Part shown: positions 11,709 to 33,360 of the stretch, in pieces
How positions within the stretch are numbered: position 1 is the first letter of the stretch
Layout of the letters: each line of letters starts with the position of its first letter
IMG/VR virus record: IMGVR_UViG_3300040801_001224
Span: 1-64,000 of that record
Strand: one strand, 5' to 3'
Length of the DNA: 64,000 bases
The notes under the pieces: model-generated
What the model saw: the letters and a program-made list of their open reading frames with translations, nothing else
Databases searched by the model: none
What the model was told of the DNA's origin: nothing
Made by a program: the position numbers and the translations under genes

Positions 11709-11909
11709 TATCCTGGATAGCAAACAATGAGAGAGTCTATGCCCCCACAAGGGACATAGCTCTCAGCCTGTTTAGTCTAAAAGGGTATACGGTCAATATA
11801 GATGACATCAAGTACTGTGGCCCAGAGAGACGCAAAAAGAAACGCAAATAGTGGTTGACATGTGGACCTAGTGATGTTATCATGTGGTAAATAGTTAGGA
11901 GTTAACACA

Positions 11910-12026: not shown

Positions 12027-12210
12027 TAATTTAATGCGTCTCATCAAGACTGACGTGTATGCAGTTGTGACAGACGGTGCTAACGTATACGTTTACGAGA
12101 GTATCGACTGTGACAGCAACTATAATGAATTAGTCGGCGTATACGAAAGCATTGATAAGTTTATTGAAGCAGGTCTCCCCTGGGAAAAACCTACAGAAAA
12201 AGTAGCATAA
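12019..12210 (+). CDS. hypothetical protein
   Basis: Start MNSNLMR overlapping the previous peptide. Confidence 0.7.
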   Translation: MNSNLMRLIKTDVYAVVTDGANVYVYESIDCDSNYNELVGVYESIDKFIEAGLPWEKPTEKVA

Positions 12211-12280
12211 AGTGGTTGACAAGTGGATACCACTTTGCTATAATACACTTATACAGTAAACAAACAGTTAGGAAAAAGTT

Positions 12281-12838
12281 ATGTCAACGAACGCAACCAT
12301 TTCAGTTATTACCCCTGAAGGCAAAGTATTATCAGTATACAACCATTGGGATGGCTATCCTGATTATTTACTTGATATGCTGACCAAGCACTACAACACA
12401 CTAACCGACGCAATGGCACTGGTTAAGCCAGGCAACATTAGCTCGGTACGTGAGCGTTGTGATGGTGATGTAGGGCACACATTTAACAACCCAATCCCTG
12501 ACCAAACCATTTATTATGGTCGTGACCGTGGTGAGAAAAACCAGGAACCAATGGTACAGGATTTAGCTACATTCGATATTAGCAAGCACCTATTTGGTGG
12601 GCGCCAGGAATATAACTACATCTTTGCTAACGGCCAGTGGATGCACCTACATGAATGGGAGGCTGAGCAGGAGGCTACTAATGAAGTTGAAGACTTTGTT
12701 GGTGATGTTGTTGAGCAAATCCGGGATGACCTAAAGCGGGATGAAACCGGTGCTGTATACGAGTTAATCGAATACTTACACTGCCTGGCTAACCCAGCTG
12801 TTGACGATATCCTTAAGAACTACTTACCCCAGGACTAG
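12281..12838 (+). CDS. conserved phage hypothetical protein
   Basis: MSTNATI...YNHWDGYP...EYNYIF motifs; own promoter. Confidence 0.85.
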   Translation: MSTNATISVITPEGKVLSVYNHWDGYPDYLLDMLTKHYNTLTDAMALVKPGNISSVRERCDGDVGHTFNNPIPDQTIYYGRDRGEKNQEPMVQDLATFDISKHLFGGRQEYNYIFANGQWMHLHEWEAEQEATNEVEDFVGDVVEQIRDDLKRDETGAVYELIEYLHCLANPAVDDILKNYLPQD

Positions 12839-12997
12839 GAGTAACCATGTTATTGTATATTACGTTCACATTATTCTTCGGTAGTGTTATTGGTTTAGTC
12901 ACTAACGAATCCCTAAATTAATTTAAGAAAGTGGTTGACAAGGCCACTTTCTTTTGTTATAATACAGGCATAAGTTAAACAGTTAGGAGTAAAACTT

Positions 12998-13345
12998 ATG
13001 GAAAACTTAATAGACATTTACGCAGAAGCCCGTCAAGCGGCGATTGATGCCTCCAACAACGAAGAGATGGCTTGGAGACTGGCTGGTCGTATGGATGCTT
13101 GTGGCTTTGCTAGTGTTAAGATCTACAAGTACAACGACAAGACCATCCGTTCTAACTCAAAGCTTGGCAAAGCCCTGGAGCAGTTAGGCATCAAGAAATC
13201 ATCTTATGAACGTTGCTATTCATGGTGGAACCCAAGCGAGAATCCCACGCAAGAGATTTCTGTTAAAGAAGCTGGCGCCCGTGCGGCGGCGGAAGTCCTA
13301 AAGAAGTATGGCTTCACAGCATATCTCGACAGTCGCTTAGACTAA
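12998..13345 (+). CDS. conserved phage hypothetical protein
   Basis: CGFA...KEAGARA...SRLD motifs; own promoter. Confidence 0.85.
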   Translation: MENLIDIYAEARQAAIDASNNEEMAWRLAGRMDACGFASVKIYKYNDKTIRSNSKLGKALEQLGIKKSSYERCYSWWNPSENPTQEISVKEAGARAAAEVLKKYGFTAYLDSRLD

Positions 13346-13421
13346 AAAATAACTGTTGAAAGTGGTTGACATCTGTTGACCACTTTGCTATAATAGCTCT
13401 ACAAACAGTTAGGAGATTAAC

Positions 13422-13688
13422 ATGAAATTAACAGGTGAAGCTTACAACAAAGTCCGTGCTGACATTTACATCACAATGGAAGACCAGGGCCTGGGTACCG
13501 ACCTCTTAAACATTATGGACATGAAAGAAGTGCGTCCTAATGTATACGTTGCTATCACAGAAGATTGCTATGATGACACCTACGTTGTGAGCGAGTTCGA
13601 TATGTCTCAGAAGCAGATCAACTTATCACAGCCTTATGCTGTTCGCAACAACTATCCAGAAGCACAACATTTTTTCAACAATTGTTAG
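13422..13688 (+). CDS. early hypothetical protein
   Basis: Own promoter and SD. Confidence 0.8.
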   Translation: MKLTGEAYNKVRADIYITMEDQGLGTDLLNIMDMKEVRPNVYVAITEDCYDDTYVVSEFDMSQKQINLSQPYAVRNNYPEAQHFFNNC

Positions 13689-13697
13689 GAGCTAATC

Positions 13698-13916
13698 ATG
13701 TCACAGTTTGCAGATTTAGTTAGAGATTTTAAGACCCGCGTGGATTCAGGTAAAATAGAACTTGATGCCGCCGCTGATTTATTTGTTGATGTTATTCAAT
13801 CATTGGAGTGGGATTTGGAAGATTATATGACTGGTGACTTTGACAGTTTCGATAACTATGCTGAGTATCGTGAAGAAGAGATTAAGATTGCCACTCGTTT
13901 AATTAAAGGAAAATAG
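13698..13916 (+). CDS. acidic hypothetical protein
   Basis: SD TTAGGAG. Confidence 0.8.
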   Translation: MSQFADLVRDFKTRVDSGKIELDAAADLFVDVIQSLEWDLEDYMTGDFDSFDNYAEYREEEIKIATRLIKGK

Positions 13917-13982
13917 TGGTTGACAACGGTTAACCACTTTGCTATAATACGGTTATAAGTTAAACAGTTAGGAGTAAAACTT

Positions 13983-14324
13983 ATGCAGGACCAAATTCAA
14001 GAATTAGTAGAAGCAATCGTTGAAGACTTCCGCCAGTGGAGTGGACGTTCTAAAACACTTAACGGTTTTGGTTATGACCTGGACGAGCATGTACAGGAAT
14101 TTGCTGACGAGATTAGAGTTAAGCCTGGTCGCAAGTATATCAAGATCATTAAAGAAAATTGTGTTTGGGGTTTCATCGTTAACACTGACACTGACAAGAA
14201 GTTCCGCAAGGGAGACATCCTTAAAGCGGCTGGTTATAACGCACCGGCACGTAACCAAGCACGTGGTAACATCCTGGACGGTGGTTACGAAATTAACTGG
14301 ACTGGACCTTCATACCTTCGTTAA
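13983..14324 (+). CDS. conserved phage hypothetical protein
   Basis: GRKYIKI...GDILKAAGYNAPA..ARGN motif; own promoter. Confidence 0.85.
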   Translation: MQDQIQELVEAIVEDFRQWSGRSKTLNGFGYDLDEHVQEFADEIRVKPGRKYIKIIKENCVWGFIVNTDTDKKFRKGDILKAAGYNAPARNQARGNILDGGYEINWTGPSYLR

Positions 14325-14327
14325 CAT

Positions 14328-14346
14328 AAGGGGGCTTAGCCCCCTT
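14328..14346. terminator. hairpin terminator between convergent genes
   Basis: AAGGGGGC-TTA-GCCCCCTT. Confidence 0.75.
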
Positions 14347-15043
14347 TACACTTTCCGCCTTTATGATATTTGGTCCACATAGATGGATTTATTTCATCTT
14401 TACCACACACAGGACACCATCGCTTAACTTTCCATCTATTAGCTTCTTTCATTTTGGCTATGTCTTCTGGAGTTCTTGCCACACCTTTCTTTAAATCACT
14501 AAGTATTTTCTTCTGATGATCAGGACATGGTTTCATAACCTGTTTGGCTCTTGCATCTTTTATCTTGGCGCGAGCTTCTGGTGAATGGGTCTTGCCGTAG
14601 AAGTGATTGTTCTCACCTTTACTCATTTCTGATATACGAGTTTTATGTTCTTCAGTATGCTTCTTGCCATAAAACGGATTGTTTTTGCCACCGTTCTGTT
14701 TAGAAATGACCTTGGCTAGTTCAACTTTATTATGTTCGTATACTCTGGCAGTTATAGGTGTTTCGTAGTTGATCTTGAGAGTCGACATACGCATAGCATT
14801 AAGAGCTGTAACCATCTTCGCTCTGTCCTTACCAGTAGTCATATATTTAAGTAACCAATGACAGATAAAGTGTTCTCTTGGTGTTAGCAGTACTAGATTA
14901 TCTTTGCTGTTATCTCCACCTAATGACTTTGGGATTATATGGTGACTCTCGTAGTACTCGCCATTGCCTTTGGATCTTTTCTCTTGACTTCGAGAGTTGA
15001 TGATGTTATAATAGGTGGTAGTGTATTTGTTTTGTATAAACAT
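14336..15043 (-). CDS. HNH homing endonuclease with NUMOD3 repeats
   Basis: ESHHIIPKSLGG...NLVLLTPREHFICH; NPFYGKKHTEE and NHFYGKTHSPE. Confidence 0.9.
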   Translation of the reverse strand: MFIQNKYTTTYYNIINSRSQEKRSKGNGEYYESHHIIPKSLGGDNSKDNLVLLTPREHFICHWLLKYMTTGKDRAKMVTALNAMRMSTLKINYETPITARVYEHNKVELAKVISKQNGGKNNPFYGKKHTEEHKTRISEMSKGENNHFYGKTHSPEARAKIKDARAKQVMKPCPDHQKKILSDLKKGVARTPEDIAKMKEANRWKVKRWCPVCGKDEINPSMWTKYHKGGKCKGG

Positions 15044-15113
15044 AATTGCTGATACTCCTTGTTAGTATTAGAGTAGTCGGGACTGCCATCCGCGGACTAC
15101 ACCCTTATTTATC
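15044..15113 (-). promoter_or_regulatory. late-type promoter and structured 5' leader of the HNH gene
   Basis: GATAAATA; hairpin GTAGTC...GACTAC; hairpin ATACT...AGTAT over SD AAGGAG. Confidence 0.6.
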
Positions 15114-15125
15114 AGGAATGTATTT

Positions 15126-15359
15126 ATGATAGCAGAGGTACTGGGATATGTGGCGTTGGCATTCTTGCTATACGCCTACACCCACTCAGATATGTGGAAG
15201 CTCAGGATATTTGGATTCCTGGGCTCCGTTGTCTTCACAATTCAAGCAGGCATGGTGGAGCTACATAGTTTAGTGGTAGCTAATATAATCTTTGCCACCA
15301 TTCATTTATACCACCTAAGAAAACTACATTTAGATAAAAAAGTGGTTGACAATGGTTAA
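15126..15359 (+). CDS. small multi-TM protein (YgjV-like)
   Basis: Three hydrophobic segments; MWKLRIFGFLGSVVF. Confidence 0.65.
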   Translation: MIAEVLGYVALAFLLYAYTHSDMWKLRIFGFLGSVVFTIQAGMVELHSLVVANIIFATIHLYHLRKLHLDKKVVDNG

Positions 15360-15404
15360 CCACTTTGCTATAATAGTGGTATAGTTAGTTAGGAGTTAAA
15401 CAAA

Positions 15405-15593
15405 ATGAGATTTGTAGATTACAACGGTAAAGAACGCATTATAGTCCCACACAACGAGGACTATGATTGCTTAACCCGCACTCGTATCCTACACAATGTA
15501 CGTGGTACGCAGTTTGAAGTTAACGAGCATGGCGGTGTTTACAGAGTCCACCCATGCAGTGGTAAGCGCATTAAGATAGGTAACTTGTTATGA
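15405..15593 (+). CDS. early hypothetical protein
   Basis: Own promoter and SD. Confidence 0.8.
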   Translation: MRFVDYNGKERIIVPHNEDYDCLTRTRILHNVRGTQFEVNEHGGVYRVHPCSGKRIKIGNLL

Positions 15594-15868
15594 GACCATT
15601 AGCAGAGTTTTGCGAATACATGGTAAAGTCAGCGACTGATGCCAAGCAGTACTTCACAGCTGAAACATACGCAGACCTTAACGCACGATTTGGTCACATG
15701 AAGAACGATGTTGCTCACAGCCACTTGCTCAAGTTAGAGCGAGAGTTAACAGAAGTTATGAACAACACAACAACTTCTATTGACCCTGAGCATGGTGTTG
15801 CGTGGACTCAACGTTGCGATGTACAGCAAGCTATTCGCTGGATGGAAGGCAAAGTTAATCTAAAGTAG
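15590..15868 (+). CDS. hypothetical protein
   Basis: ATGA overlap. Confidence 0.75.
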   Translation: MRPLAEFCEYMVKSATDAKQYFTAETYADLNARFGHMKNDVAHSHLLKLERELTEVMNNTTTSIDPEHGVAWTQRCDVQQAIRWMEGKVNLK

Positions 15869-15877
15869 AAAACGATT

Positions 15878-16060
15878 ATGAAACTTCAAGAAGACATTAA
15901 GAGACACGTAAAAGACGAGAAGTATTTGAGTATTGTTAAACTGACTGATATATTTGACGCAGTAGTTGAACAGGCACATGCTAACTTTGGTAATTTTGAT
16001 GAGTACACCAACAACTTCTTACGCCAAGCATTAGAGGAATCTATTAAAGAAAAAGGCTAA
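15878..16060 (+). CDS. hypothetical protein
   Basis: Fills the gap in the operon. Confidence 0.7.
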   Translation: MKLQEDIKRHVKDEKYLSIVKLTDIFDAVVEQAHANFGNFDEYTNNFLRQALEESIKEKG

Positions 16061-16131
16061 AATAGTGGTTGACATCCCAACCACTTATTGCTATAATAGT
16101 GGCATAAGTTAATAAACAGTTAGGAAAAACG

Positions 16132-16416
16132 ATGGAACTATTAGACAAAATTGCACTCATATTAGGATACCTTGTAATGGTAGGCGTGGGTGTATTAATT
16201 GTAGCAATTGTACTGGAACAGATCGTTAGTTACCGTAATGACCATGAGTTCTTTACGTTAACTATATTTAAATTTGGTGTTGTGTACGCTCGCAGTGAGC
16301 AAGCACAATGGAAGATTGAAGCATACAGACCATCAGCTAAGGGTAAGCGAGTACACTTCTCAGCACCCATGTGGTTTAACAAGATTTTTAATAACGTTGG
16401 TGGACGTGAAGTATAG
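16132..16416 (+). CDS. membrane-anchored hypothetical protein
   Basis: Own promoter; N-terminal TM segment. Confidence 0.8.
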   Translation: MELLDKIALILGYLVMVGVGVLIVAIVLEQIVSYRNDHEFFTLTIFKFGVVYARSEQAQWKIEAYRPSAKGKRVHFSAPMWFNKIFNNVGGREV

Positions 16417-16447
16417 TCCACTCAGTATCTAAACCGAGGAAAAGAAA

Positions 16448-16816
16448 ATGAACCTGGCACAAGAATTAGTAGCAAACCGAAAAACAATCGCTGAAGCAAA
16501 TAACGCTGAGAAGAGATCTTATGGCGTTAAAGTAGAAGCGGCAGTTGGCGACTTAAAAGTTAAAAAGAACCTACGTACACGAGAAGTACCACAGGAACTG
16601 GCTCGTAAGTCTCCAGAACTCCCCGGACTGGGTAAAGTATCACGACGTAAGACAGACAACCCACTGGTTAAAGAGTTACTGGCTAACGGTGAAGTCATTG
16701 GTGAAGCAGTAGACACTCGTAAAGAGAAGCGTTGCTGGACTATTACTATCAATGGTAAGACAATTGAATGTCACACAATCAGCAAAGGCATTCGTCAGTA
16801 TGGAGCGCAATCATAA
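16448..16816 (+). CDS. basic hypothetical protein
   Basis: SD GAGGA. Confidence 0.8.
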   Translation: MNLAQELVANRKTIAEANNAEKRSYGVKVEAAVGDLKVKKNLRTREVPQELARKSPELPGLGKVSRRKTDNPLVKELLANGEVIGEAVDTRKEKRCWTITINGKTIECHTISKGIRQYGAQS

Positions 16817-17061
16817 TGGATAAGAAAACTGGATTCCTATTTGTAAGACTGGTACTGATTACCTGGGCATTTAGTGTGGCACTGTTTCTAACATTTGCTG
16901 GTCCTGGTAAAGACCTACAGTTCTACACCACTATTATTGTACTCATGGGTGTAATCAGTATAACACTTGCTCCATTCATGGCACAGATCAATGACATGGC
17001 ACAGAGTGCTATTGATCGGATGTTGAACAATGAAGATAGTAAACAGTCTAAAGAGTCTTAA
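16816..17061 (+). CDS. membrane protein
   Basis: TAATG coupling; two TM segments. Confidence 0.75.
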
Positions 17062-17152
17062 GAACCGTCCCGGCTGTAAAATAGTACGCAGACGTGGCAA
17101 GGTATTTGTAATCAACAAAGAGAACCCAAAGTTCAAAGCGAGACAACGATGA
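17030..17152 (+). CDS. rpmJ: 50S ribosomal protein bL36, zinc-independent (YkgO/RpmJ2-like) type; not in ORF track
   Basis: [40 protein letters not shown] matches bL36 end to end; ATGA-coupled to the next gene. Confidence 0.92.
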
Positions 17153-17400
17153 AATACGTAGAAGCAATCAACCAGTACCAACTATGCGGATGTAAGAACA
17201 TTGTTGTTCGCACACGATCCGGTAAAGAGTATGAGTTGAACCGAGACGTAGTTGAGAACGCACATGAAGAAAACGGTGACCTATATGTATATGGTGGTTA
17301 CTGGAAGAAAGTTCGCACAGCATTGAGACCCAAGTACCACCACAAATGGTTCTGGTTATCAAATGTAGAGTTTGTCCGACAGGGAGGACTGACACAGTGA
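17149..17400 (+). CDS. hypothetical protein
   Basis: ATGA overlap with bL36. Confidence 0.75.
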
Positions 17401-17618
17401 TAAACAACAAAGCAACATATGTCTGTTCTAAAAGCCATCTGGTTATAGAGCGAAATGAACATAAGCTATTCCTAAATCTGGGTGAGCTTGATGAACGACA
17501 GATAGTTCCACTGGATGCTGGTACACAGTACCTCAGAGGTGAAACCATTACTGGTGACCAACTGGAAAAGATCTGGGGGTTTTATTCTGACGTTGAAACT
17601 TATTGGTATGAAGCATGA
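17397..17618 (+). CDS. hypothetical protein
   Basis: GTGA overlap; SD GGAGG. Confidence 0.7.
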   Translation: MINNKATYVCSKSHLVIERNEHKLFLNLGELDERQIVPLDAGTQYLRGETITGDQLEKIWGFYSDVETYWYEA

Positions 17619-17857
17619 AACTATTAGCTGAAAATTATAACACCAAAGTCTACCAGAAAGACAACGATAAGCCTGGTCTCCTGATCATTCATCAGGGTGA
17701 ACCAGGTGACACTCGTGACACTCTCGTAGCCAACCTATCAGGTATATGGCCAAACACTGGTAAGTACTTACTAACCAGAGTGACTAAACGTGATGGCGCA
17801 TTCGACAGCCATTGGACTGGTTTTATTCCCTCCTATAAAATGCCCGATTTATCTTAA
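17615..17857 (+). CDS. hypothetical protein
   Basis: ATGA overlap. Confidence 0.75.
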   Translation: MKLLAENYNTKVYQKDNDKPGLLIIHQGEPGDTRDTLVANLSGIWPNTGKYLLTRVTKRDGAFDSHWTGFIPSYKMPDLS

Positions 17858-17921
17858 AAAAGTGGTTGACATGTGGTCCTAGCTTTGCTATAATGTGTTT
17901 ATACAAAGTTAGGAGTTAACC

Positions 17922-18212
17922 ATGTTAAGCAAAAAACAACTATTCATCTCACTGGACGAGTTCTATAACGATCGTTATGGATACGGTGAGTCAGCTTACC
18001 AGCTACAAGAGTTAAGCCATCCTTTTATCAGCAATGAGACTTATGGTCGCAAGAGCATGATATACATTCACACTGGTGACCTAGACATTCGCAAGAAGTT
18101 AGAGAGCTGGTTAGATGCTGATGGCTTTCGAGTAAACCGTAATTATGCTAAAGGCAACCCAGTAACTGAAGTTCAAGTTAGTTACTTCAAGGGTTGGCAC
18201 TGGGCGGAGTAA
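17922..18212 (+). CDS. early hypothetical protein
   Basis: Own promoter and SD. Confidence 0.85.
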   Translation: MLSKKQLFISLDEFYNDRYGYGESAYQLQELSHPFISNETYGRKSMIYIHTGDLDIRKKLESWLDADGFRVNRNYAKGNPVTEVQVSYFKGWHWAE

Positions 18213-18216
18213 GAAC

Positions 18217-18399
18217 ATGAATAATTATATAGTGACAGGTGAGTATGGCAACCAAGTGGGTGACCGTATCGAACTAGCACTAACTGCCAAGAACGAAACT
18301 AACGCCAGTAAGAACTTTGTTAAGCGTGTTAAGTCTGGTGAGTTTGGTTACATCGACACTAACTACATGACAGTAAACGTAGAGAAGGTATCAAAATGA
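18217..18399 (+). CDS. hypothetical protein
   Basis: SD GGAG. Confidence 0.75.
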   Translation: MNNYIVTGEYGNQVGDRIELALTAKNETNASKNFVKRVKSGEFGYIDTNYMTVNVEKVSK

Positions 18400-18626
18400 G
18401 ATATGTAAAGACTATCAACTTATGGGCTGAAGGAGTACAAGACAAACTCCGTTCAGGTGAACTTAAACCTCAGCGTGGTCAGTGGATGATCTGTGGTGAA
18501 GACAACCAATACAAGTGTCGCTTTGTTAAAGCTGACGAGCGTAGCATTTGGGTAATCCATAAGAAGCCAGGTTGTGGTAAAGCATTTATAGAACTGTGCC
18601 GTAACTGGAGGGAGCAAACAGCATGA
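18396..18626 (+). CDS. hypothetical protein
   Basis: ATGA overlap. Confidence 0.75.
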   Translation: MRYVKTINLWAEGVQDKLRSGELKPQRGQWMICGEDNQYKCRFVKADERSIWVIHKKPGCGKAFIELCRNWREQTA

Positions 18627-18868
18627 ATATACTAAACCCATCCTTATCCCTGCAAGAGATAATTGATGCGACTACAAGAATCATTATTTATGTTGCGACC
18701 GGATTTAGCCTTGCCAGTGGTATTTCGTTCTCAAGTTTGGTGCCTGACTATATGTTCTTATTGCCCATTATGGTTATGGCACTGATGATCGGCAGTCTTC
18801 TAGGCGCAGTGATTGCTGATCATATATTTGATGTGTGGGAAAAGAAGTATTACAAGTACCGAAAATAG
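18623..18868 (+). CDS. membrane protein
   Basis: ATGA overlap; two TM segments. Confidence 0.75.
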   Translation: MNILNPSLSLQEIIDATTRIIIYVATGFSLASGISFSSLVPDYMFLLPIMVMALMIGSLLGAVIADHIFDVWEKKYYKYRK

Positions 18869-18929
18869 TGGTTGACATGTGGTCAACCCTTTGCTATAAT
18901 AGTGGCATAAACAGTTAGGAGAAACAATT

Positions 18930-19586
18930 ATGTTTACTAGATCAACTATCAAAGTCCAAGACATACTTCGTGGTTATGCTCGCATTAACTACCAGGTAGA
19001 TGGCTACTGGAGTCGTGAAACAATCACTATATATGTTGACCGCAGGATGGACTGGGAAACCAAGAAAGCTATCTGGGTAGCCAATGTTAATCATTCAACA
19101 GGTGGTCGCGATACAGAGCAGGTTGCTGATGACAACCAAGCCACTCGCAACTTTGCTACTGCTCTTATGGATGCCGCTTATCAAGCAGACCTAATCATGG
19201 CACAGTCAGAAGGTTTAGAGCTTGCTTACAGGGCTAGTCAGAAAGCACAAGAGTTGAAAGAGCTGTATGCCGAAGCTGAGTTCCAGGCTAAGTTGGAACA
19301 GGATCTACCAATAGGAATGGATATGGCTACCAAGATCATCGACGACTTGCGTAACGAAGTTAAAGTTGGTCTCGAGAAGGATCCCTGGTTATGTCAGAGT
19401 AAACGCATAACATTGCGCTCACGTGTTACAAACTACGAGAACGAGATCTGTGCGTACACTACTAACAGTGCTAATCCAAAAATACGGTTTAGAGTTAATG
19501 GTGAATCAGTAGGCATTATCTGGGCCAAAGAGTTTGTTGCCAACATGAGCGCGAACAACAGCATGGCGGCCAAATTGGTCGCTTAG
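18930..19586 (+). CDS. early hypothetical protein
   Basis: Own promoter and SD; 218 aa. Confidence 0.85.
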   Translation: MFTRSTIKVQDILRGYARINYQVDGYWSRETITIYVDRRMDWETKKAIWVANVNHSTGGRDTEQVADDNQATRNFATALMDAAYQADLIMAQSEGLELAYRASQKAQELKELYAEAEFQAKLEQDLPIGMDMATKIIDDLRNEVKVGLEKDPWLCQSKRITLRSRVTNYENEICAYTTNSANPKIRFRVNGESVGIIWAKEFVANMSANNSMAAKLVA

Positions 19587-19597
19587 GAGTTAAGACA

Positions 19598-19834
19598 ATG
19601 ACAACTCGTAACACAAGAGAAGAACTTGAAAACTCAGTACACCAATATGGTGCTGAAGTAACTCGCTTACAAGCCAGACTGGATGAGCTTGAAGGTACTA
19701 TGAACTTTGGTGAAAGGGTTAAGCTCAGAGGTAATGGTGAGATCGTTGGTGAAGATACCAACACTCTTTTCGCAACATTTAACTATTATGCTGACGCCAA
19801 AGCATTCGTAGAATTAATCAATAATATGCGATAA
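19598..19834 (+). CDS. hypothetical protein
   Basis: SD TTAGGAG. Confidence 0.8.
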   Translation: MTTRNTREELENSVHQYGAEVTRLQARLDELEGTMNFGERVKLRGNGEIVGEDTNTLFATFNYYADAKAFVELINNMR

Positions 19835-19903
19835 AGTGGTTGACAACCACTCTTCCAGGCTGTATAATCCAGATATAAGTTAAACAGTTAAGGAATAAAC
19901 ATT

Positions 19904-20179
19904 ATGAACTCTCGTCACAAGCAAGCAATTGAATCAGTACTTAAAGAAATGAACTGGTATGCCAACATATTTGGTAAGGGTGAAGTTGTACCATTCCCAA
20001 CCAACGCTGAAGAGTGTGGTCGTATCCGTAGTTTCATTGAAGGACAACTGAGTCCAGAGAACTTACATTGTGATGGTGAAGCTGACCCAATGTACGTTAG
20101 ACAACGTTACAATGAACTGAACACTGCCTGGGATGCCCTGGCATTAATCGATGGCAACCAAGCTGAACCAATGGTATAA
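19904..20179 (+). CDS. conserved phage hypothetical protein
   Basis: LSPENLHCDGE motif; own promoter. Confidence 0.85.
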   Translation: MNSRHKQAIESVLKEMNWYANIFGKGEVVPFPTNAEECGRIRSFIEGQLSPENLHCDGEADPMYVRQRYNELNTAWDALALIDGNQAEPMV

Positions 20180-20189
20180 GGAGAGGAAC

Positions 20190-20354
20190 ATGAGCATGGA
20201 ACCCACCGACAAAGAAATCGAAAAGTATATGAAAGAGCATAATGAGAACTATTATGCCGCTCGAGAAGTTCTTCGTGAACGAGCGTATGGCAAGAAGTAT
20301 GGCAATGATAAGCCAGCACATCAAAGCTGGGGTGATTACTGGAAAGGATATTAG
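20190..20354 (+). CDS. hypothetical protein
   Basis: SD AAGGAG; start MSMEPTD. Confidence 0.75.
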   Translation: MSMEPTDKEIEKYMKEHNENYYAAREVLRERAYGKKYGNDKPAHQSWGDYWKGY

Positions 20355-20417
20355 TGGTTGACATGTGGTCTTAATGGATGTATAATCACGATATAAGTTA
20401 AACAGTAAGGAATAAAG

Positions 20418-20684
20418 ATGGCCCAGTTACTAAACACAGTCAACGTAATAGACTACAACACTCGTTATGAACGTGAGCTAACAATAGCAAGCGCACATAT
20501 TGAAATGAAACTACGTGATGAACTTGTAGGTAAGTTTGTAGAGTTTGTTGGCTTTGAGAATAGACCAGGTCCTACCAAATGGTTCCTGTTCCAAGAAGTA
20601 GCCCGCACAGTAGAGTTCACAAGTGCTGGTGGAATAGAAATCAACGGTCACACAGTATTAGACGGCAAGGTGGAAGTAGCATGA
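20418..20684 (+). CDS. early hypothetical protein
   Basis: Own promoter and SD. Confidence 0.8.
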   Translation: MAQLLNTVNVIDYNTRYERELTIASAHIEMKLRDELVGKFVEFVGFENRPGPTKWFLFQEVARTVEFTSAGGIEINGHTVLDGKVEVA

Positions 20685-20854
20685 ACTTAGTGACATTATT
20701 TTTTGTTGGCGTAATTGGCGTCCTTATACTCAAAGCAATCGCTACCTACTTTGGCTTTATTGGTCTTATGGTAGCACTGGTGGGCACAGCAGTAATATTT
20801 GGTGCTATTGTAGCATGGGATAAGATCAAGTACCCCAACTTCACACAGGAGTAG
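20681..20854 (+). CDS. small membrane protein
   Basis: ATGA overlap; two TM segments. Confidence 0.7.
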   Translation: MNLVTLFFVGVIGVLILKAIATYFGFIGLMVALVGTAVIFGAIVAWDKIKYPNFTQE

Positions 20855-20857
20855 TCC

Positions 20858-21220
20858 ATGAACGTATATGTAGTCGTAGCTGGTTTCCATTATGAAGGTG
20901 AGCAAGCACTTTTAGTGCTTGCTCACTTTGAGCAAGCACTCGCCTCATTCACAGACTCCAAGCAAGCAGAACAGTTCCGTGATTATCTAGAGATGTCACA
21001 GAAGCTGGGTCAAGCAGTTGCTGGTACTGATGGCTATGATTACTTCTGGGTTAACACTGTTCCAGTCAGCAACACCTGGGAAGATGCCGTTAATCGTTTA
21101 GAGCAGGAACGGGAAGACTATAACCAGATGCTTGAGGATGAACGTCAGGAACGTTTCCAGGAACTACAGGATCAACAACCCACACAACCAACTCTGGCAG
21201 ACGTATTCCCCACACAATAG
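20858..21220 (+). CDS. hypothetical protein
   Basis: SD AGGAG. Confidence 0.8.
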   Translation: MNVYVVVAGFHYEGEQALLVLAHFEQALASFTDSKQAEQFRDYLEMSQKLGQAVAGTDGYDYFWVNTVPVSNTWEDAVNRLEQEREDYNQMLEDERQERFQELQDQQPTQPTLADVFPTQ

Positions 21221-21230
21221 GATAGACATT

Positions 21231-21563
21231 ATGAATTACGAACAAGCACTAAAAGATATCAAGCGTAAGCGCAAAGAGCTGGCTAAAGCAGAAGCCGCCT
21301 TCAGAAAGATTGAAGCGGAGCATATGTTTACAGTTGGCAAGACCAACAACAAAGGTCTGAACACCAGGGTAAAGGTACTCAAGAACAATGAGAAGTTTAT
21401 CTTCACCAACACTAACACCGGTCACACTGTGACTACATTAAGGTATCCTAACAGTTACGGTGAGCGTAAGGTATACGAGATCGTGAACGGTAAACAACAA
21501 CTGGTTATGGGTGGTACTCGGGTATCCATCAACCAAATAAAAGAATACACCATGTCTAAATAA
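21231..21563 (+). CDS. basic hypothetical protein
   Basis: SD AGGA; start MNYEQAL. Confidence 0.75.
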   Translation: MNYEQALKDIKRKRKELAKAEAAFRKIEAEHMFTVGKTNNKGLNTRVKVLKNNEKFIFTNTNTGHTVTTLRYPNSYGERKVYEIVNGKQQLVMGGTRVSINQIKEYTMSK

Positions 21564-21631
21564 GTGGTTGACAACCACATTCCTTTCCTGTATAATCACG
21601 GTATAAGTTAAACAGTTAAGGAATAAACATT

Positions 21632-26650: not shown

Positions 26651-27055
26651 TTGATAGCAATTATTAATCCAGAATACACTGGTAGATTTTCAGGCAGAGT
26701 AATCGGCTATGTTTGTCGTGTGAGTGAACGAGCTCACTGGCCTGAGGAAGAACAGTGGGATGGACAAGGTGCTCCATACGCAGGTATGATCTACATAAAG
26801 TTCGGAGTCAAGGGTGAGGAAATCATGGAGGATCGTCTAGTGAATGGTGACGACTCTATGTATACTGGACACGCCACTGACAGCGATGTGGGCGGCCTAA
26901 TACGTGAGTTTGTGGAAGATTATCTGGATCGGGATAGGCGATTACTCAGTTTTCGTCAGGTTCCCGGCTGTAGAATCAAAGGCCAACTATATTATAGAAC
27001 TAGCGTAGAAGCAGACAAATACCGGGGAATCCCCTGCCTAATGTATGGACGATAA
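26651..27055 (+). CDS. hypothetical protein, start uncertain
   Basis: The frame is open from 26537. Confidence 0.6.
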   Translation: MIAIINPEYTGRFSGRVIGYVCRVSERAHWPEEEQWDGQGAPYAGMIYIKFGVKGEEIMEDRLVNGDDSMYTGHATDSDVGGLIREFVEDYLDRDRRLLSFRQVPGCRIKGQLYYRTSVEADKYRGIPCLMYGR

Positions 27056-27132
27056 ATAATACTAGAGGTACACACATATGAAAATAAAATTCCACCCAAT
27101 TTACATAGGCCCAATCCCACCTGGAAAATAAC

Positions 27133-27540
27133 ATGGACAAGAAAGATCGCACTATTGAAGAGATTAAGGGTCATTACGACAATGGCCAGTTAGCTGAACA
27201 CTACTTTGCTGACATACAGCACGACCAATATTTTGGAAAGTTTAGGCGTTGGTATAAAGACGGCACACCACAATGTGACTGTGAGTTTAACGATGACAAT
27301 CGACTAGTAGGGATTGCCAGGTGGTGGTGGCCCAACGGACAATTACAGATGATCAGTGAGAGTGTTGGTGGCGGTGATTGTGGCTTCTTTGCGGAATTCG
27401 AACAAGACGGCACACTTGTAGAAGCAGATTATACTACTGAATCGGAAACATATGACATTCAAAAAGAAGTGGAAGCTGTTGGGTCTGATGGAATTACTGA
27501 CGAATTTATAATGATGTTGAGGTTAAAGTATTACGAATGA
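27133..27540 (+). CDS. MORN-variant (YwqK-like) repeat protein with family A tail
   Basis: HYDNGQL, WYKDGTP, WWPNGQL repeats; ends TDEFIMMLRLKYYE. Confidence 0.8.
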   Translation: MDKKDRTIEEIKGHYDNGQLAEHYFADIQHDQYFGKFRRWYKDGTPQCDCEFNDDNRLVGIARWWWPNGQLQMISESVGGGDCGFFAEFEQDGTLVEADYTTESETYDIQKEVEAVGSDGITDEFIMMLRLKYYE

Positions 27541-29123: not shown

Positions 29124-29333
29124 ATGAAGAAAATCGGGTTGGGGTATTTTATTCATGCGTTATTCTGGTTTTCCATGGGTGCCTTATTATTAGGACAACC
29201 CTGGAAGGAGAAGAGAGAACCTGTTACTATAGGCCATGAAATGTGCCTAACAGAAGATAGAGACCTAGAAGCAGTTGTTCACGTCAAGAAGATAGACTTA
29301 ATCAAAGTCGTATGTAAACCTCAGAAAGATTGA
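29124..29333 (+). CDS. membrane-anchored small protein
   Basis: N-terminal TM; Cys pair; sigma70 promoter at 29063 and GTAAATA at 29112. Confidence 0.7.
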   Translation: MKKIGLGYFIHALFWFSMGALLLGQPWKEKREPVTIGHEMCLTEDRDLEAVVHVKKIDLIKVVCKPQKD

Positions 29334-29414
29334 CAAGACCACTTTTTTATTATATAATAATGATAGTTAGAAACTATGACTAACTATTCTTTTAACCTTA
29401 ATTGGAGAGGACCA

Positions 29415-30587
29415 ATGAAAAAACTTTTATTCACATTATTAACTGTGTTCGCACTATCAGCCTGTGGTGGCGGTGGTGGCGGTGGTGGCAGTGAACCTGC
29501 ACCTACACCAACAAACCGTGCGCCTACTGTTAGTTTCACAGTGGCATGTACTGATTTAGAATGTGTGTTTGACGCAACTGCCAGAGATACTGACGGCACA
29601 GTCACATCATATGCCTGGGACTTTGGTGATGGCAATACCAGTACTACTGAAGATCCGAGCCACACTTATTCTAGTTATGGCGAATACAATGTTCGTGTAA
29701 CTGTCACAGATGATGACAATGCTACTGGCACCAGTGTTAAGCCGCTGACTGTTGCTATTGACATTCACGCTCAGACGGCAACTATTGATATGTTTGATAG
29801 CTCAATTATCTTCAAACAAGACTTTGACCATAGAGTTGATGGTGAGTACACGACTAATGACCTTAGTGACGACTTTGAATGTCTTGTCGGTTCCCTAGCA
29901 ACAATGGCTGGTGCCTGTTCAAGCCCAAGTATTAACTTAGAAGAGCTTGCTATTGAGAACGGGCAAATGAAAGTCACCTTTAAAGAAGGCATGGTTGGTA
30001 CTAACTTAGGCTTTGAGAAAAATTTAGGACAAGAGCATGATGAATTATATCTAACTTTCCAAGTTCGCTTTGATGATAACTACGATCAGTCTACTAACGG
30101 CGGTAAATTAATGGGCTTGGGTGGTAATGCAGACGGACGTAAAGATGGGTTTGTGCCAAGTGGCTGTGATGCTGTGGGTCCTAATGAAGGGTTTAGTACA
30201 AGATTTCAATATCGACAAGAAGGCAGGCTCGCGCACTACGTCTATCATCAGAACAAAACAGTTGATTGCGGCGATCAAAGATATATTGAAGACTTTGCTG
30301 AAGATGACAACTATTTTAGCTTCCGTAAAGAGCAGACTTATACTTTAGAAATGCGTGTAAAAATGAATGATGTTGGCCAAGCAAATGGCACAATGGAATC
30401 ATACATCAATGGTGTTAAGACACGTACTGATGAGTTTGTATTTAGTGAAGACGGCACAATTGGTATTAACAGATTCCTATTCGTACTTTATATAGGCGGT
30501 GGCCCAAATCAAGGATTTGAATTACTTAACCCAAGCACACTATACTTAGACAACTTTGTTCTAAGTACTGAGCGTGTAGTTCAGTGA
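29415..30587 (+). CDS. lipoprotein with PKD domain and polysaccharide lyase (PL14-like) domain
   Basis: Lipobox LSAC plus poly-Gly; YAWDFGDG...PSHTY PKD motif; GGKLMGLGG, GFSTRF, YVYH, YIGGG; promoter at 29330-29358. Confidence 0.8.
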   Translation: MKKLLFTLLTVFALSACGGGGGGGGSEPAPTPTNRAPTVSFTVACTDLECVFDATARDTDGTVTSYAWDFGDGNTSTTEDPSHTYSSYGEYNVRVTVTDDDNATGTSVKPLTVAIDIHAQTATIDMFDSSIIFKQDFDHRVDGEYTTNDLSDDFECLVGSLATMAGACSSPSINLEELAIENGQMKVTFKEGMVGTNLGFEKNLGQEHDELYLTFQVRFDDNYDQSTNGGKLMGLGGNADGRKDGFVPSGCDAVGPNEGFSTRFQYRQEGRLAHYVYHQNKTVDCGDQRYIEDFAEDDNYFSFRKEQTYTLEMRVKMNDVGQANGTMESYINGVKTRTDEFVFSEDGTIGINRFLFVLYIGGGPNQGFELLNPSTLYLDNFVLSTERVVQ

Positions 30588-30593
30588 TAAATA

Positions 30594-30837
30594 AGATGTA
30601 AGTTTGGTGGATTGTGATTGTTATAATAGTGGCGTCTAAATATTATAATGTATTGTAGTTACAATCCTCCGGCTCTTTACCTTTGTGTATATATTTTGGT
30701 TATATACACTATCAGCCGTCCTAGCAATACTAGAGGTACTGAAAATAGGTGTATGGGGCTTTTGTTTTTGAAGACACCTATGACAGCATATCAAAATGTC
30801 ATACAAAAACAACGAAGGGCTGATTAATTCAGCCCTT
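30594..30837 (+). ncRNA. candidate ~240-nt structured ncRNA
   Basis: GATAAATA upstream; several consecutive stems; terminator at the end. Confidence 0.5.
30815..30837. terminator. hairpin terminator between convergent units
   Basis: AAGGGCTGA-TTAAT-TCAGCCCTT. Confidence 0.8.
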
Positions 30838-30843
30838 TCCTAT

Positions 30844-31119
30844 CTACATTAAATTAACTGTATCGTCAGAACGACAATAAGACTGATAGTGTTGTGTGAC
30901 GTTGCCATCAATATCCCATACCATCGTTTCAGTAGGGCTGATGCCTTGCTCTACATAATGTAGATTGCCATTATCGTAAGTCTTATACATGATGGCTTTT
31001 TTATCCTTCTCATTAACTGCCATCATAGCGCCACGCAATAGCCCAATGTCTTCAAAGCCATTGGCTGTTAGTACATCACGCCAATTGTCTTTTGTTATTG
31101 TATATAAATCCATAATCAC
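30844..31119 (-). CDS. hypothetical protein
   Basis: ATAAATA at 31139-31145 and AGGTG SD upstream; exact start uncertain. Confidence 0.7.
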   Translation of the reverse strand: MIMDLYTITKDNWRDVLTANGFEDIGLLRGAMMAVNEKDKKAIMYKTYDNGNLHYVEQGISPTETMVWDIDGNVTQHYQSYCRSDDTVNLM

Positions 31120-31162
31120 CTATTCTCGTTTATATATGTATTTATTAAGAAGTTGAGTTCGG

Positions 31163-31351
31163 ATGAGATTAACTGAAAAAATTGTAATGGAAGTAATAAA
31201 TGAATTGAAACCATGCCAATATACAGAAGTAATTGGGCAGTTAATTGGTAGGGGTTATGATAGTTCTGAAGTTCACGCTATGCTGGATAAAATGGACAAA
31301 GAAGAAAAATTTGATGTTGATACTGACAGCATTGTGCCGCGCATCATTTAG
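31163..31351 (+). CDS. small hypothetical protein, possibly winged-helix-like
   Basis: Helix-turn-helix-like pattern YTEVIGQL..RGYDSSEVHAMLDKM. Confidence 0.6.
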   Translation: MRLTEKIVMEVINELKPCQYTEVIGQLIGRGYDSSEVHAMLDKMDKEEKFDVDTDSIVPRII

Positions 31352-31430
31352 CAACCCAAGCACACTATACTTAGACAACTTTGTTCTAAGTACTGAGCGT
31401 GTAGTTCAGTAACATCAATAACGACGTTAC

Positions 31431-31451
31431 GAAGGGCTGAATCAGCCCTTC
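31431..31451. terminator. hairpin terminator ending the late minus-strand operon
   Basis: GAAGGGCTGA-A-TCAGCCCTTC, a near copy of 30815-30837. Confidence 0.75.
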
Positions 31452-32029
31452 TTATCTTTTTCCAACACCGCGTAAATGTTTTTTTGCACTGACTTAGTTC
31501 TGGGCATAAACGAAATTTTTAAATTATTGTGATTGGCGTATTCATCAACTGCTTTCTTTACACCATCTCTAATAAAATAATCATCACAGACAATACTGCC
31601 TGTGACCATACTCCCCCAAATTTCTAAGTCACTTTTAACGTCTTCATAAAGGTGTGAGCCATCAATATGCAATAAATCAATTGGCTTCTTAAATTGAAAG
31701 TTGATATTTTTGGACATTACTGGGGTGTATGCACGAATTAATTCAAAATTTTCAATACTTTGTGTGAATTGGTTAAAATGGTGGATGCTATACGGTATGT
31801 CTCGCATGCCGTATCCATAATCAGTATCATGGGGGAAACTTGGAACTGGATCTATAGCAGTTAATAACACAGACGGATGTTTGTTCATACCCAACGAATA
31901 AGCACTCCTGCCGTAAAAAGATCCAATTTCTACTATCCAACCATTTTTCGGAATAGCCTTAGCAAGTGATGCCAAAAATAATAATTTATCAGGATGTGAC
32001 CATCCAGGTATGTCATTGTTTATTATCAT
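31442..32029 (-). CDS. class I SAM methyltransferase (Methyltransf_24-like)
   Basis: IVEIGSFYGRS, LLHIDGSHLYE, VCDDY. Confidence 0.9.
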   Translation of the reverse strand: MIINNDIPGWSHPDKLLFLASLAKAIPKNGWIVEIGSFYGRSAYSLGMNKHPSVLLTAIDPVPSFPHDTDYGYGMRDIPYSIHHFNQFTQSIENFELIRAYTPVMSKNINFQFKKPIDLLHIDGSHLYEDVKSDLEIWGSMVTGSIVCDDYFIRDGVKKAVDEYANHNNLKISFMPRTKSVQKNIYAVLEKDKKG

Positions 32030-33360
32030 TTCTTTATAATAATCGCCAGGTCGTCACACCCATAACGCTCGCCCGTATTCAGCGTAAGCCCATTCTCTTC
32101 AGCATATTCATCCACAGCTCTAGAAGCATCTGGAAAATCATGGTTGTTATAATCGTCAACAACAATGATGCCGCCCTTCTTCATTCTCGAATGCATCGTG
32201 TCTAGATACTTCTTGGTATCTTCATAGGTGTGGCCAGCATCCGCAAACAAAGCATCAACACTATCTTCTTCAATGTCTAGTATTTGCTCATCTAAATCAC
32301 CAGTATAGATCTCCATATTTTCATGCTCGCCTACATGACGCTTAAATAACTTCAATCCATAGCGATCAGTTTTCCTAAACTTGCCTTCAAATGGATTTTC
32401 AGCCATTATTTCAGATAACAATGTCCCACCCTTCTTCGGTAAGAAGTCATAACATTTCAGTTTAACTGACGAATCTCTGCGGTTATTAGCAAGTACATAT
32501 GTACTTCTTCCAACCCACGTACCTAATTCAACTATTGTAGAATTTCTAGGTAAGAATCTTGCTACTACTGCCAGGTAATACAATTTGTCAAGACTAGTCC
32601 ATCCAGGAATATCTTCGTTAATATCAAAATGCTTTGTGATTGGGCTCGCATATATTGGCTCATTAGATTTCCCAATGGCATGTTTAATGCCATATCTATT
32701 TAACAACTCATGAACCATTGTGTATGCCTTAGGTGTCACTGGCATCTGTTTTTTAATTAATTCTGCATCTACAGATAAAGTGACATCGACATCATCAGCA
32801 AATAACCTAATCAACGTAAACGGATCTTCAGATAACTCGTCATATGTTATACTTGGGTAGTCGTTGTTGATCGTATACGCTTGTTTGAAAAACTTAAACA
32901 TTAAGTGATAATCAATTTCAGAAAGTTTAACGCCGTCAAGTGCTGTGAATGTGTTGATAGTATGTAAGTTAATAATGACTACATTATACTTCCTTTTTAA
33001 CTCACCCAGCAAATCATGTGCTGTTTTGTGAAACAAACCAGGGTATAAGTAAAAAGCAAATGATTTTTTCTCTTTAATAATCTGTTCGTTGATGTGCCAT
33101 AGTCTTGAACCCACCTCGTTGTGTGGGTCTTCAAATCTTTCATGATCAATATATGTCATTACACCATCCATCATTTTGACACGTCGATCATCTTTATCAG
33201 CATCTATTTCAAATAATCCACGGCAGTCAGATTTTTGAAATTTATCTCCGTAGATTTCTTTTAAGTATGACTGAACAACCGCCACTGCGTATTCGGCACC
33301 TGAATTTGGTGCCGACTCAATACATACGACTGTTGGTTTCTTTGGATTAATTTTTTTCAT
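32026..33360 (-). CDS. sulfotransferase-like N-terminal domain fused to a Methyltransf_24-like domain
   Basis: SAPNSGAE and ITYDELSEDP; IVELGTWVGRST, LFADAGHTYE, IVVDDY; start MKKINPK. Confidence 0.8.
   Translation of the reverse strand: MKKINPKKPTVVCIESAPNSGAEYAVAVVQSYLKEIYGDKFQKSDCRGLFEIDADKDDRRVKMMDGVMTYIDHERFEDPHNEVGSRLWHINEQIIKEKKSFAFYLYPGLFHKTAHDLLGELKRKYNVVIINLHTINTFTALDGVKLSEIDYHLMFKFFKQAYTINNDYPSITYDELSEDPFTLIRLFADDVDVTLSVDAELIKKQMPVTPKAYTMVHELLNRYGIKHAIGKSNEPIYASPITKHFDINEDIPGWTSLDKLYYLAVVARFLPRNSTIVELGTWVGRSTYVLANNRRDSSVKLKCYDFLPKKGGTLLSEIMAENPFEGKFRKTDRYGLKLFKRHVGEHENMEIYTGDLDEQILDIEEDSVDALFADAGHTYEDTKKYLDTMHSRMKKGGIIVVDDYNNHDFPDASRAVDEYAEENGLTLNTGERYGCDDLAIIIKK

What the first reader, a model, noticed from the sequence alone, without database searches (positions are those of the whole stretch)
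30586..30837. Candidate novel ~240-nt structured RNA with a possible pseudoknot or switch
Seen between GATAAATA and a terminator: GGATTGTGATTG (30609-20) pairs with TAGTTACAATCC (30656-67, with G-U pairs) and encloses TTATAATA/TATTATAA. CGGCT/AGCCG encloses GTGTATATA/TATATACAC. TAGGTGT (30746-52) pairs with ACACCTA (30774-80), and its loop TTGTTTTTG (30762-70) is complementary to CAAAAACAA (30804-12), which flanks TATGACA/TGTCATA. Most of the segment is paired. Inference: a late ncRNA, perhaps a decoy or antitoxin-like RNA, or a partner of the adjacent small proteins.
Basis: partly seen in the sequence, partly recalled or inferred. Interest (0 to 1): 0.65.

Follow-up and report, generated by a model that had tools for sequence, protein, structure and literature searches.

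The report
Hairpin-rich non-coding spacer in phage cassette
The hairpins are real and this is the most palindrome-dense non-coding stretch of a 328-kb T4-like jumbo phage, but it sits inside a recently inserted 825-bp two-gene cassette and has no relatives or RNA data, so a functional small RNA is possible but unproven.

Summary
The fold beats dinucleotide shuffles on both strands (z -4.3 on +, -5.1 on -). The segment holds seven perfect stems of 7 bp or more, against 0.9 in shuffles. Only one other window of the genome is as hairpin-dense.

No ORF in it looks coding, and there is no Rfam match or tandem repeat.
- The stems are almost all Watson-Crick palindromes and show no strand preference.
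- The 'terminator' is mainly the minus-strand terminator of the neighbouring ORF91.
- No homologue exists in any collection searched, and no RNA run holds the locus. Covariation and expression are therefore untestable.

New context: the segment is the left end of an 825-bp insertion flanked by the genome's longest exact repeat (58 nt). The insertion carries two orphan genes and splits a junction that related phages keep intact. GATAAATA is a real 99-copy late-type promoter motif in this phage, and one copy sits at the insert's left edge.

Best reading: a plus-strand-transcribed cis-acting spacer, serving as 3' UTR and transcription insulator. It may also be a discrete ~240-nt late RNA.

The parts
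29376..30587 (+). PKD + polysaccharide lyase 14 lipoprotein gene (PL14). Its perfect sigma70 promoter lies at 29330-29358. Its transcript runs into the structured segment.
   Evidence: Pfam PF21294 6e-21 and PKD 8.5e-19; 12/12 promoter match
30528..30585 (+). Copy 1 of the 58-nt exact direct repeat, which is the last codons of PL14
   Evidence: longest exact repeat in the 328-kb genome
30586..30593 (+). GATAAATA late-type promoter-like motif. It overlaps the PL14 stop codon and sits at the exact left edge of the unique insert. Predicted start is about 30599-30600.
30609..30667 (+). Hairpin H1: outer stem with 3 G-U pairs and an inner 8-bp perfect stem. It contains TGtTATAAT (30619-27), which resembles the -10 half of the phage's sigma70 promoter family but lacks a -35.
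30670..30718 (+). Hairpin H2: 5-bp outer helix plus a 9-bp perfect inner stem at 30685-30709
30745..30781 (+). Hairpin H4: 8-bp perfect stem. Its loop holds TTGTTTTTG (30762-70).
30779..30803 (+). Hairpin H5: 7-bp perfect stem. It overlaps H4 by 3 nt.
30804..30812 (.). CAAAAACAA. On the minus strand this is the U-tract of terminator T1. On the plus strand it is complementary to 30762-70.
30815..30837 (.). Terminator hairpin T1. It meets terminator criteria on the minus strand (for ORF91) and has a weak U-tract on the plus strand. Its stem is the same as that of T2.
30844..31119 (-). ORF91: an orphan gene with gene-like codon usage. It has weak similarity to a repeat in large proteins.
31163..31351 (+). 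ORF62: an orphan gene predicted as a three-helix bundle, weakly winged-helix-like
31353..31410 (+). Copy 2 of the 58-nt direct repeat, a non-coding remnant of the PL14 3' end
31431..31451 (+). Terminator T2, 18 nt after the repeat. This is the ancestral type of PL14 terminator. It overlaps the last codons of the methyltransferase gene.
31442..32029 (-). 195-aa methyltransferase gene (MT195), convergent with PL14. In relatives it lies directly after PL14.

Best explanation
The segment 30588-30814 plus hairpin T1 is a non-coding, palindrome-dense spacer. It forms the left end of an 825-bp cassette (structured spacer, T1, ORF91 on minus, ORF62 on plus). The cassette was inserted into the convergent junction between the PL14 lyase gene and a methyltransferase gene of a T4-like jumbo phage. 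The insertion duplicated that junction.

Shown:
- The hairpins are real and non-coding.
- The insertion is real and is flanked by 58-nt exact repeats.
- Relatives have only a short spacer plus one terminator at this position.
- T1 with its U-tract terminates ORF91 on the minus strand.

Inferred:
- The spacer is transcribed on the plus strand, certainly by read-through from the early sigma70-driven PL14 gene and possibly also from the GATAAATA late-type motif at its left edge.
- It acts in cis. The stack of stable hairpins and the shared terminator would stop or slow converging polymerases and protect RNA 3' ends, keeping PL14 and ORF91 transcription apart.
- The cassette arrived by recombination through the duplicated junction, as regulatory cassettes do in T4-type phages.

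A trans-acting role is not required by any evidence found.
For: - Hairpins and statistics.
- Non-coding status.
- The 58-nt repeat is the longest exact repeat in the genome.
- Junction copy 1 equals copy 2 plus a ~210-nt indel, with the same terminator stem.
- In relatives, PL14 is followed by 25-37 nt and one terminator (L041, L046) or directly by the convergent gene (L042, L047).
- T1 scores as a minus-strand terminator 6 nt after the ORF91 stop.
- PL14 has a 12/12 sigma70 promoter.
- The integrated arrangement appears in two further assemblies: L040 is 100% identical and L051 is 99.9% identical across the right junction.
- The phage is T4-like by capsid.
- Junction-mediated cassette shuffling and mini-circles are documented in T4-type phages (PMC2839356; PMC4122927).
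Against: - No transcript data exist, so even plus-strand transcription is inferred.
- H1-H5 lack U-tracts, so they are not classical intrinsic terminators. An insulating or stabilising effect is assumed, not shown.
- Relatives manage with a single terminator, so five extra hairpins are not obviously needed.
- A GATAAATA motif followed by about 250 nt without an ORF and then a terminator occurs nowhere else in this genome. That arrangement fits a dedicated RNA gene at least as well.
Confidence: 0.45

Rival explanations
1. It is an independent late small RNA gene. The GATAAATA motif at 30586 starts a ~240-nt structured RNA that ends at T1. This RNA acts in trans as a decoy, a regulator of ORF91 or ORF62, or an anti-defence RNA. 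This is essentially the first reader's idea.
For: - GATAAATA occurs 99 times (78 on plus), where I estimate about 14 per strand by chance from base composition. Sixty copies are intergenic, and they precede the tail sheath, fibre and virion genes and a tRNA.
- With spacing slack the local copy ranks 42 of 99, and only 7% of random sites score as well.
- This is the only motif copy followed by a long ORF-less stretch and then a terminator hairpin.
- The segment is strongly structured and non-coding.
Against: - The strict flank score ranks 90 of 99 and equals random.
- The plus-strand U-tract of T1 is weak.
- The stems are symmetric palindromes with no strand bias beyond composition.
- No homologues were found, so there is no covariation.
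- No complementary target of 13 nt or more was found apart from promoter-like words.
- There is no Rfam hit and no RNA run.
Confidence: 0.25
2. It is a DNA-level by-product: a recombination scar or patchwork of regulatory fragments. The pieces would be the -10 half of a sigma70 promoter module, a 5'UTR-like word and terminator-like palindromes. It would have been carried along with the cassette and have no function of its own, or act only as a recombination-prone site.
For: - It is a discrete ~210-nt indel relative to the second junction copy and to relatives.
- The stems are perfect Watson-Crick palindromes that score equally on both strands.
- It shares 14-17-nt words with the phage's promoter -10 regions and with a GATAAATA-proximal leader at 27058-71.
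- The phage is rich in repeated promoter/stem-loop modules and homing endonucleases.
Against: - Each shared word has E 0.25-0.9 on its own.
- A random patchwork would not be expected to yield seven perfect stems.
- Its right end supplies the U-tract that ORF91's terminator needs.
Confidence: 0.22
3. It encodes a small protein. Candidates are the 59-aa ORF (30648-30827, plus), the 58-aa ORF (minus), or the hydrophobic 28-aa GTG ORF (30685-30771). The last could be a type I toxin-like peptide whose structured mRNA masks its start.
For: - The ORFs are open.
- The 28-aa peptide is hydrophobic, and its codon score of 0.14 is borderline.
Against: - Codon scores of -0.14 and -0.25 match spurious ORFs.
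- None has a Shine-Dalgarno at a usable distance, although this phage uses strong TAGGAG-type sites.
- There was no gene call and no family hits.
- T-rich sequence yields hydrophobic peptides by chance.
Confidence: 0.05

Closest known systems
PeSL regulatory cassettes and PeSL-mediated modular shuffling or mini-circles in T4-type phages (Arbiol et al. 2010, PMC2839356; Comeau et al. 2014, PMC4122927)
   Same: - It is a T4-like phage.
- Short repeated regulatory junctions flank an ORFan insertion in a plastic region.
- Stem-loops act as terminators or attenuators between units.
- The phage carries about 80 sigma70 promoter plus stem-loop modules of PeSL type.
- Recombination between the 58-nt repeats would release an 825-bp circle.
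   Different: - The repeats here are a gene 3' end plus a terminator, not a promoter/stem-loop module.
- The structured spacer holds only the -10 half of such a promoter.
- No circle or empty site was observed.
T4 late promoters (TATAAATA at -10, no -35, gp55-dependent). This comparison rests on my own knowledge.
   Same: An 8-nt AT-rich core, with no conserved upstream element, lies upstream of virion genes. Start codons at a fixed +13 to +16 in 28 cases imply a start about 6 nt downstream of the core.
   Different: - The first base is G, not T.
- The recognition factor was not identified (no Sigma70_r2 hit).
- Activity of the copy at 30586 is untested.
Bidirectional intrinsic terminators at convergent genes
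   Same: T1 is a GC-rich 9-bp hairpin with an A-tract on one side and a T-rich tail on the other. It sits between converging genes.
   Different: Only the minus orientation meets the U-tract rule. It is preceded by about 210 nt of extra hairpins that ordinary junctions, including those of relatives, lack.
Phage-encoded small RNAs such as T4 species 1/2 (RNA C/D) or cyanophage S-PM2 CfrI (recalled from memory, not tested)
   Same: It is a short ORF-less unit in a T4-like genome, bounded by a promoter-like motif and a hairpin.
   Different: There is no sequence or Rfam similarity, no expression evidence and no antisense partner gene.
Type I toxin-antitoxin loci with convergent RNAs sharing a terminator, such as Bacillus prophage txpA/ratA and bsrG/SR4 (recalled from memory)
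   Same: A roughly 200-nt structured RNA candidate converges on a small gene and shares its terminator.
   Different: ORF91 is 89-91 aa and not a hydrophobic peptide. The overlap would cover only the terminator. No toxin-like ORF has coding signal.

Membership tests
Any Rfam RNA family | Covariance-model score at or above the family's gathering threshold | tested here: not met
   Best hit was sraA at 25 bits against a threshold of 56 (E 0.62). The whole window had zero hits at gathering threshold.
Structured functional RNA (general) | Fold more stable than dinucleotide shuffles | tested here: met
   z -4.29 on plus and -5.10 on minus. It is equal on both strands, so it is not RNA-specific.
Structured functional RNA (general) | Compensatory base changes among homologues | not testable with these tools
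   No homologue was found in phage records, IMG/VR, metagenome contigs, species genomes or relatives' loci. The only other copies are 100% identical.
Structured functional RNA (general) | A discrete transcript | not testable with these tools
   Only three DNA runs, all from one microbial-mat sample, hold the locus. None is an RNA run.
Intrinsic terminator (T1, 30815-37) | GC-rich hairpin followed by a U-tract | tested here: met
   Met on the minus strand (tail CGTTGTTTTT). Not met on the plus strand by the scan's rule.
T4-type late promoter | Core -10-like octamer of the phage's own late family | tested here: met
   There is an exact GATAAATA at 30586-93. The family has 99 copies and precedes virion genes.
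T4-type late promoter | Family-typical flanks and start region | tested here: inconclusive
   The strict PWM ranks it 90 of 99, equal to random. The shift-tolerant PWM ranks it 42 of 99, reached by 7% of random sites.
PeSL (promoter-early stem-loop) | Sigma70 -35 and -10 boxes with an associated stem-loop | tested here: not met
   Only TGtTATAAT and the downstream AGTGGC match the family. The -35 position reads TAAGTT.
PeSL-type modular shuffling | Indel of ORFan genes bounded by repeated regulatory sequence | tested here: met
   An 825-bp insert with two orphan genes lies between 58-nt exact repeats plus similar terminators. It is absent from relatives.
Protein-coding gene | Codon usage like the genome's genes, a ribosome-binding site, and homologues | tested here: not met
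   Scores were -0.14 and -0.25 against 0.39 for genes. There was no gene call and no Pfam or PHROG hit.
Type III toxin-antitoxin RNA (ToxI-like) | Tandem direct repeats next to a toxin gene | tested here: not met
   No tandem repeats in 30400-31500.
MITE or IS-derived miniature element | Multiple copies, terminal inverted repeats and a short target duplication | tested here: not met
   It is single-copy in the genome. Its ends do not pair (my reading of the indel ends in the alignment).

The most novel reading that the evidence does not exclude
The 825-bp unit is a self-contained mobile cassette of a T4-like jumbo phage. It would move as a mini-circle through the 58-nt junction repeat. It would carry its own late-promoter-driven ~240-nt structured RNA gene of a new family, acting in trans with the two orphan proteins, for example as a decoy or anti-defence RNA bound by the winged-helix-like ORF62.
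Probability: 0.1. Interest if true: 0.7.

Novelty: new member of a known kind. Interest (0 to 1): 0.35.

Why it matters
If the segment is only a cis-acting spacer, it is a clear example of how ORFan cassettes enter T4-like jumbo phages. Here the entry was by duplication of a gene-end/terminator junction rather than a promoter module, and the cassette brought its own transcription boundaries.

If a discrete late RNA is made, it would be an orphan phage small-RNA family on a potentially mobile cassette and would be worth testing.

The work also gives this uncultured phage a usable regulatory map: about 80 sigma70 early promoters and about 70-85 GATAAATA late promoters, some of them leaderless-like.

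Tried and rejected
- **Homologue searches, all empty.**
  - blastn of 29300-32100 against phage records.
  - An exact hairpin word in IMG/VR.
  - A degenerate PL14 C-terminal word in IMG/VR and in metagenome contigs. The 17 metagenome loci were unrelated.
  - A hairpin pattern in species genomes gave 120 chance hits with no extended similarity.
  - blastn and nhmmer of the insert against relatives' loci.
  - ORF91 and ORF62 are orphans in 5.8 billion proteins. HMMER over 1.8 billion representatives matched ORF91 only weakly to a repeat in large proteins, and none of the three of those hits I scanned has a Pfam family.
  - The search for related loci with PL14 found only PKD domains.
  - Relatives' full records could not be searched.
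- **Expression.** No RNA run was found. Laying the three DNA runs showed only identical low-depth unitigs, with no empty-site or circle joint.
- **Structure of neighbouring proteins.** The ORF91 model was unusable (pLDDT 46). The ORF62 model (pLDDT 78.5) matched winged-helix/HTH domains only at E about 1.
- **Antisense target search.** Only 12-14-nt words were found, mostly promoter -10 regions.
- **Late sigma factor.** No Sigma70_r2 domain hit and no gp45 clamp C-terminal domain hit.
- **Considered and dropped without a formal test.**
  - Integron attC: no GTTRRRY core or integrase.
  - IS200/605-type hairpin ends: single copy, no transposase.
  - Replication origin: genes and GC skew converge here, which is terminus-like.
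  - CRISPR-repeat mimic: no resemblance to repeats I recall.

Full report
**Setting.** The window is the first 64 kb of a 328,096-bp viral contig with terminal repeats.
- It comes from a microbial-mat metagenome.
- It encodes a T4 gp23-family capsid protein (PF07068, E 2.4e-81) and 26 tRNAs.
- The finding lies where plus-strand genes on the left meet minus-strand genes on the right.
- On its left is a PKD + polysaccharide lyase 14 lipoprotein gene (29376-30587, +). On its right is a 91-codon ORF (30844-31119, -).

**Observation.**
- The 252-nt stretch folds at -71.3 kcal/mol against -52.5 +/- 4.4 for dinucleotide shuffles (z -4.29). The reverse strand gives z -5.10.
- It holds seven perfect stems of at least 7 bp, against 0.86 +/- 0.90 in 1000 shuffles (maximum 5).
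- Only 2 of 5204 genome windows contain five perfect hairpins, and this is one.
- Among 46 non-coding gaps of at least 180 nt it has the most hairpins.
- By GC-adjusted MFE alone it ranks 37th of 2851 windows, and the top window is inside a coding ORF. Stability alone would therefore not single it out; the density of perfect palindromes in non-coding DNA does.

**Not coding, not a known RNA.**
- The 59-aa (+) and 58-aa (-) ORFs score -0.14 and -0.25 on a codon log-odds trained on this genome. Spurious ORFs score -0.16 +/- 0.19 and genes 0.39 +/- 0.15.
- The neighbours ORF91 and ORF62 score 0.455 and 0.436.
- JGI called no gene here, and Pfam and PHROGs are silent.
- No Shine-Dalgarno lies at a usable distance, although this phage's genes carry strong TAGGAG-type sites.
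- Rfam gives nothing: the best hit is 25 bits against a threshold of 56.
- There are no tRNAs and no tandem repeats.

**The segment is part of an insertion.**
- The last 58 nt of the lyase gene (30528-30585) recur exactly at 31353-31410. This is the longest exact repeat in the whole genome.
- After the second copy come 18 nt and a terminator, T2 (31431-51), with the same stem as T1 (30815-37).
- An alignment shows that junction copy 1 equals copy 2 plus a ~210-nt indel, which is the structured segment. Similarity resumes at the terminator and runs about 10 nt beyond it.
- Between the copies lie ORF91 (-) and ORF62 (+). Both are orphans in 5.8 billion proteins.
- ORF91 matches only a repeat in a few large proteins.
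- ORF62 is a predicted three-helix bundle with weak winged-helix resemblance.
- In related phages (lyase 45-57% identical), the lyase stop is followed by 25-37 nt and one terminator (L041, L046), or directly by the convergent gene (L042, L047). In L042 that convergent gene is the 195-aa methyltransferase homologue.
- The short junction is therefore ancestral, and the 825-bp unit, including the structured piece, is derived.
- Two other assemblies from the same study carry the integrated form. L040 spans the lyase body, the repeat, the insert and the second repeat at 100% identity. L051 spans ORF62, the repeat, T2 and the methyltransferase at 99.9%.
- This rules out an assembly loop around a free circle.

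**Promoters.**
- The phage has about 80 perfect TTGACA-17-TATAAT promoters. Many are repeated modules with a stem-loop around the -35. They resemble the PeSL cassettes of T4-type phages (PMC2839356; PMC4122927). The lyase gene has one, at 29330-58.
It has 99 copies (78 on +), against about 14 per strand that I estimate from base composition.
- Sixty copies are intergenic, and a conserved TA lies at +12/+13.
- Twenty-eight copies have a start codon at +13 to +16.
- Copies lie upstream of the tail sheath (E 8e-253), a tail-fibre-like protein, virion proteins and a tRNA.
- This matches what I know of T4 late promoters (TATAAATA, no -35).
- One copy sits at 30586-93, overlapping the lyase stop and marking the exact left edge of the unique insert.
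- Its flanks score like random sequence under a strict matrix (rank 90 of 99). They look typical if 1-2 nt of spacing slack is allowed (rank 42 of 99, reached by 7% of random sites).
- It is the only copy followed by about 250 ORF-less bases and then a terminator hairpin.

**Terminator and 'pseudoknot'.**
- T1 meets terminator rules only on the minus strand (tail CGTTGTTTTT) and lies 6 nt past the ORF91 stop.
- On the plus strand, the helix 30762-70/30804-12 around H5 (-27.0 kcal/mol) and H4 plus an inner H5 (-26.2 kcal/mol) are about equal. A switch or knot is possible but untested.

**Strand.** H1 has three G-U pairs on plus. However, the 10 kcal/mol advantage of the plus strand equals the difference between the shuffle means. 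There is no strand-specific signal.

**What could not be tested.**
- No homologue was found anywhere, so covariation is impossible.
- Only DNA runs from one sample hold the locus, so expression is unknown.
- No antisense target stands out.

**Verdict.**
- My best reading (0.45) is a cis-acting, plus-strand-transcribed spacer of a recently acquired cassette. It would serve as a 3' UTR and insulator between converging units, and its right end supplies ORF91's terminator tail.
- A discrete late small RNA (0.25) and a functionless recombination patchwork (0.22) remain open. A small protein is unlikely (0.05).
No positive evidence for function exists either.

Noticed in passing
window 7015-21596 (+), and genome-wide: About 80 perfect sigma70 promoters (TTGACA-17-TATAAT). 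Many are repeated modules with AAAGTGG...CCACTTT stems around the -35 and a shared leader ending in AGTTAGGAG. They resemble the PeSL cassettes of T4-type phages.
   Followed up: partly
genome-wide; in window 5245, 22733, 27051, 30586 (+) and 15113, 46810, 59812 (-): GATAAATA occurs 99 times (78 on +), mostly 13-50 nt before start codons. It precedes the tail sheath, fibre and virion genes and a tRNA. Twenty-eight copies have the start codon at +13 to +16, suggesting leaderless late mRNAs.
   Followed up: partly
window 15043-15113 (-); genome 125138-125164 (-) and 230370-230439 (-): Three minus-strand genes share GATAAATA plus a conserved two-hairpin leader. The first stem has a variable, compensating inner part, and the second covers the Shine-Dalgarno. 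The gene in the window is an HNH + NUMOD3 homing endonuclease. This recalls the late-transcript control of T4-type homing endonuclease genes.
   Followed up: partly
genome 81881-83548 (+): A 555-aa HNH homing endonuclease gene with its own GATAAATA lies directly after the gp23-family capsid gene (my ORF call 80606-81784; Pfam match 80771-81751).
   Followed up: partly
window 29464-29493: Three 9-nt tandem units encode the poly-glycine linker after the lipobox cysteine of the PL14 lipoprotein.
   Followed up: no
window 27051-27135: GATAAATA is followed by a 17-codon mini-ORF with its own Shine-Dalgarno, ending 1 nt before the start of a 135-aa MORN-like gene. The 14-nt word AATACTAGAGGTAC of this leader recurs at 30726-39 inside the structured segment.
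   Followed up: partly
genome 73389/73431, 98775/98799, 132490-132526, 135303/135310: Several GATAAATA copies occur as close inverted pairs forming palindromes. These could be divergent or convergent promoters, or binding sites of a dimeric factor.
   Followed up: no
L046:2616-3253: In one relative the lyase gene is followed by two short methyltransferase-like fragments (48 and 50 aa) before the intact methyltransferase. The same junction is therefore unstable there too.
   Followed up: no
window 30847-31119 (-): ORF91 matches a short motif that recurs 4-7 times in a few large metagenomic proteins (best E 2e-13). It may be a single unit of an uncharacterised repeat.
   Followed up: partly
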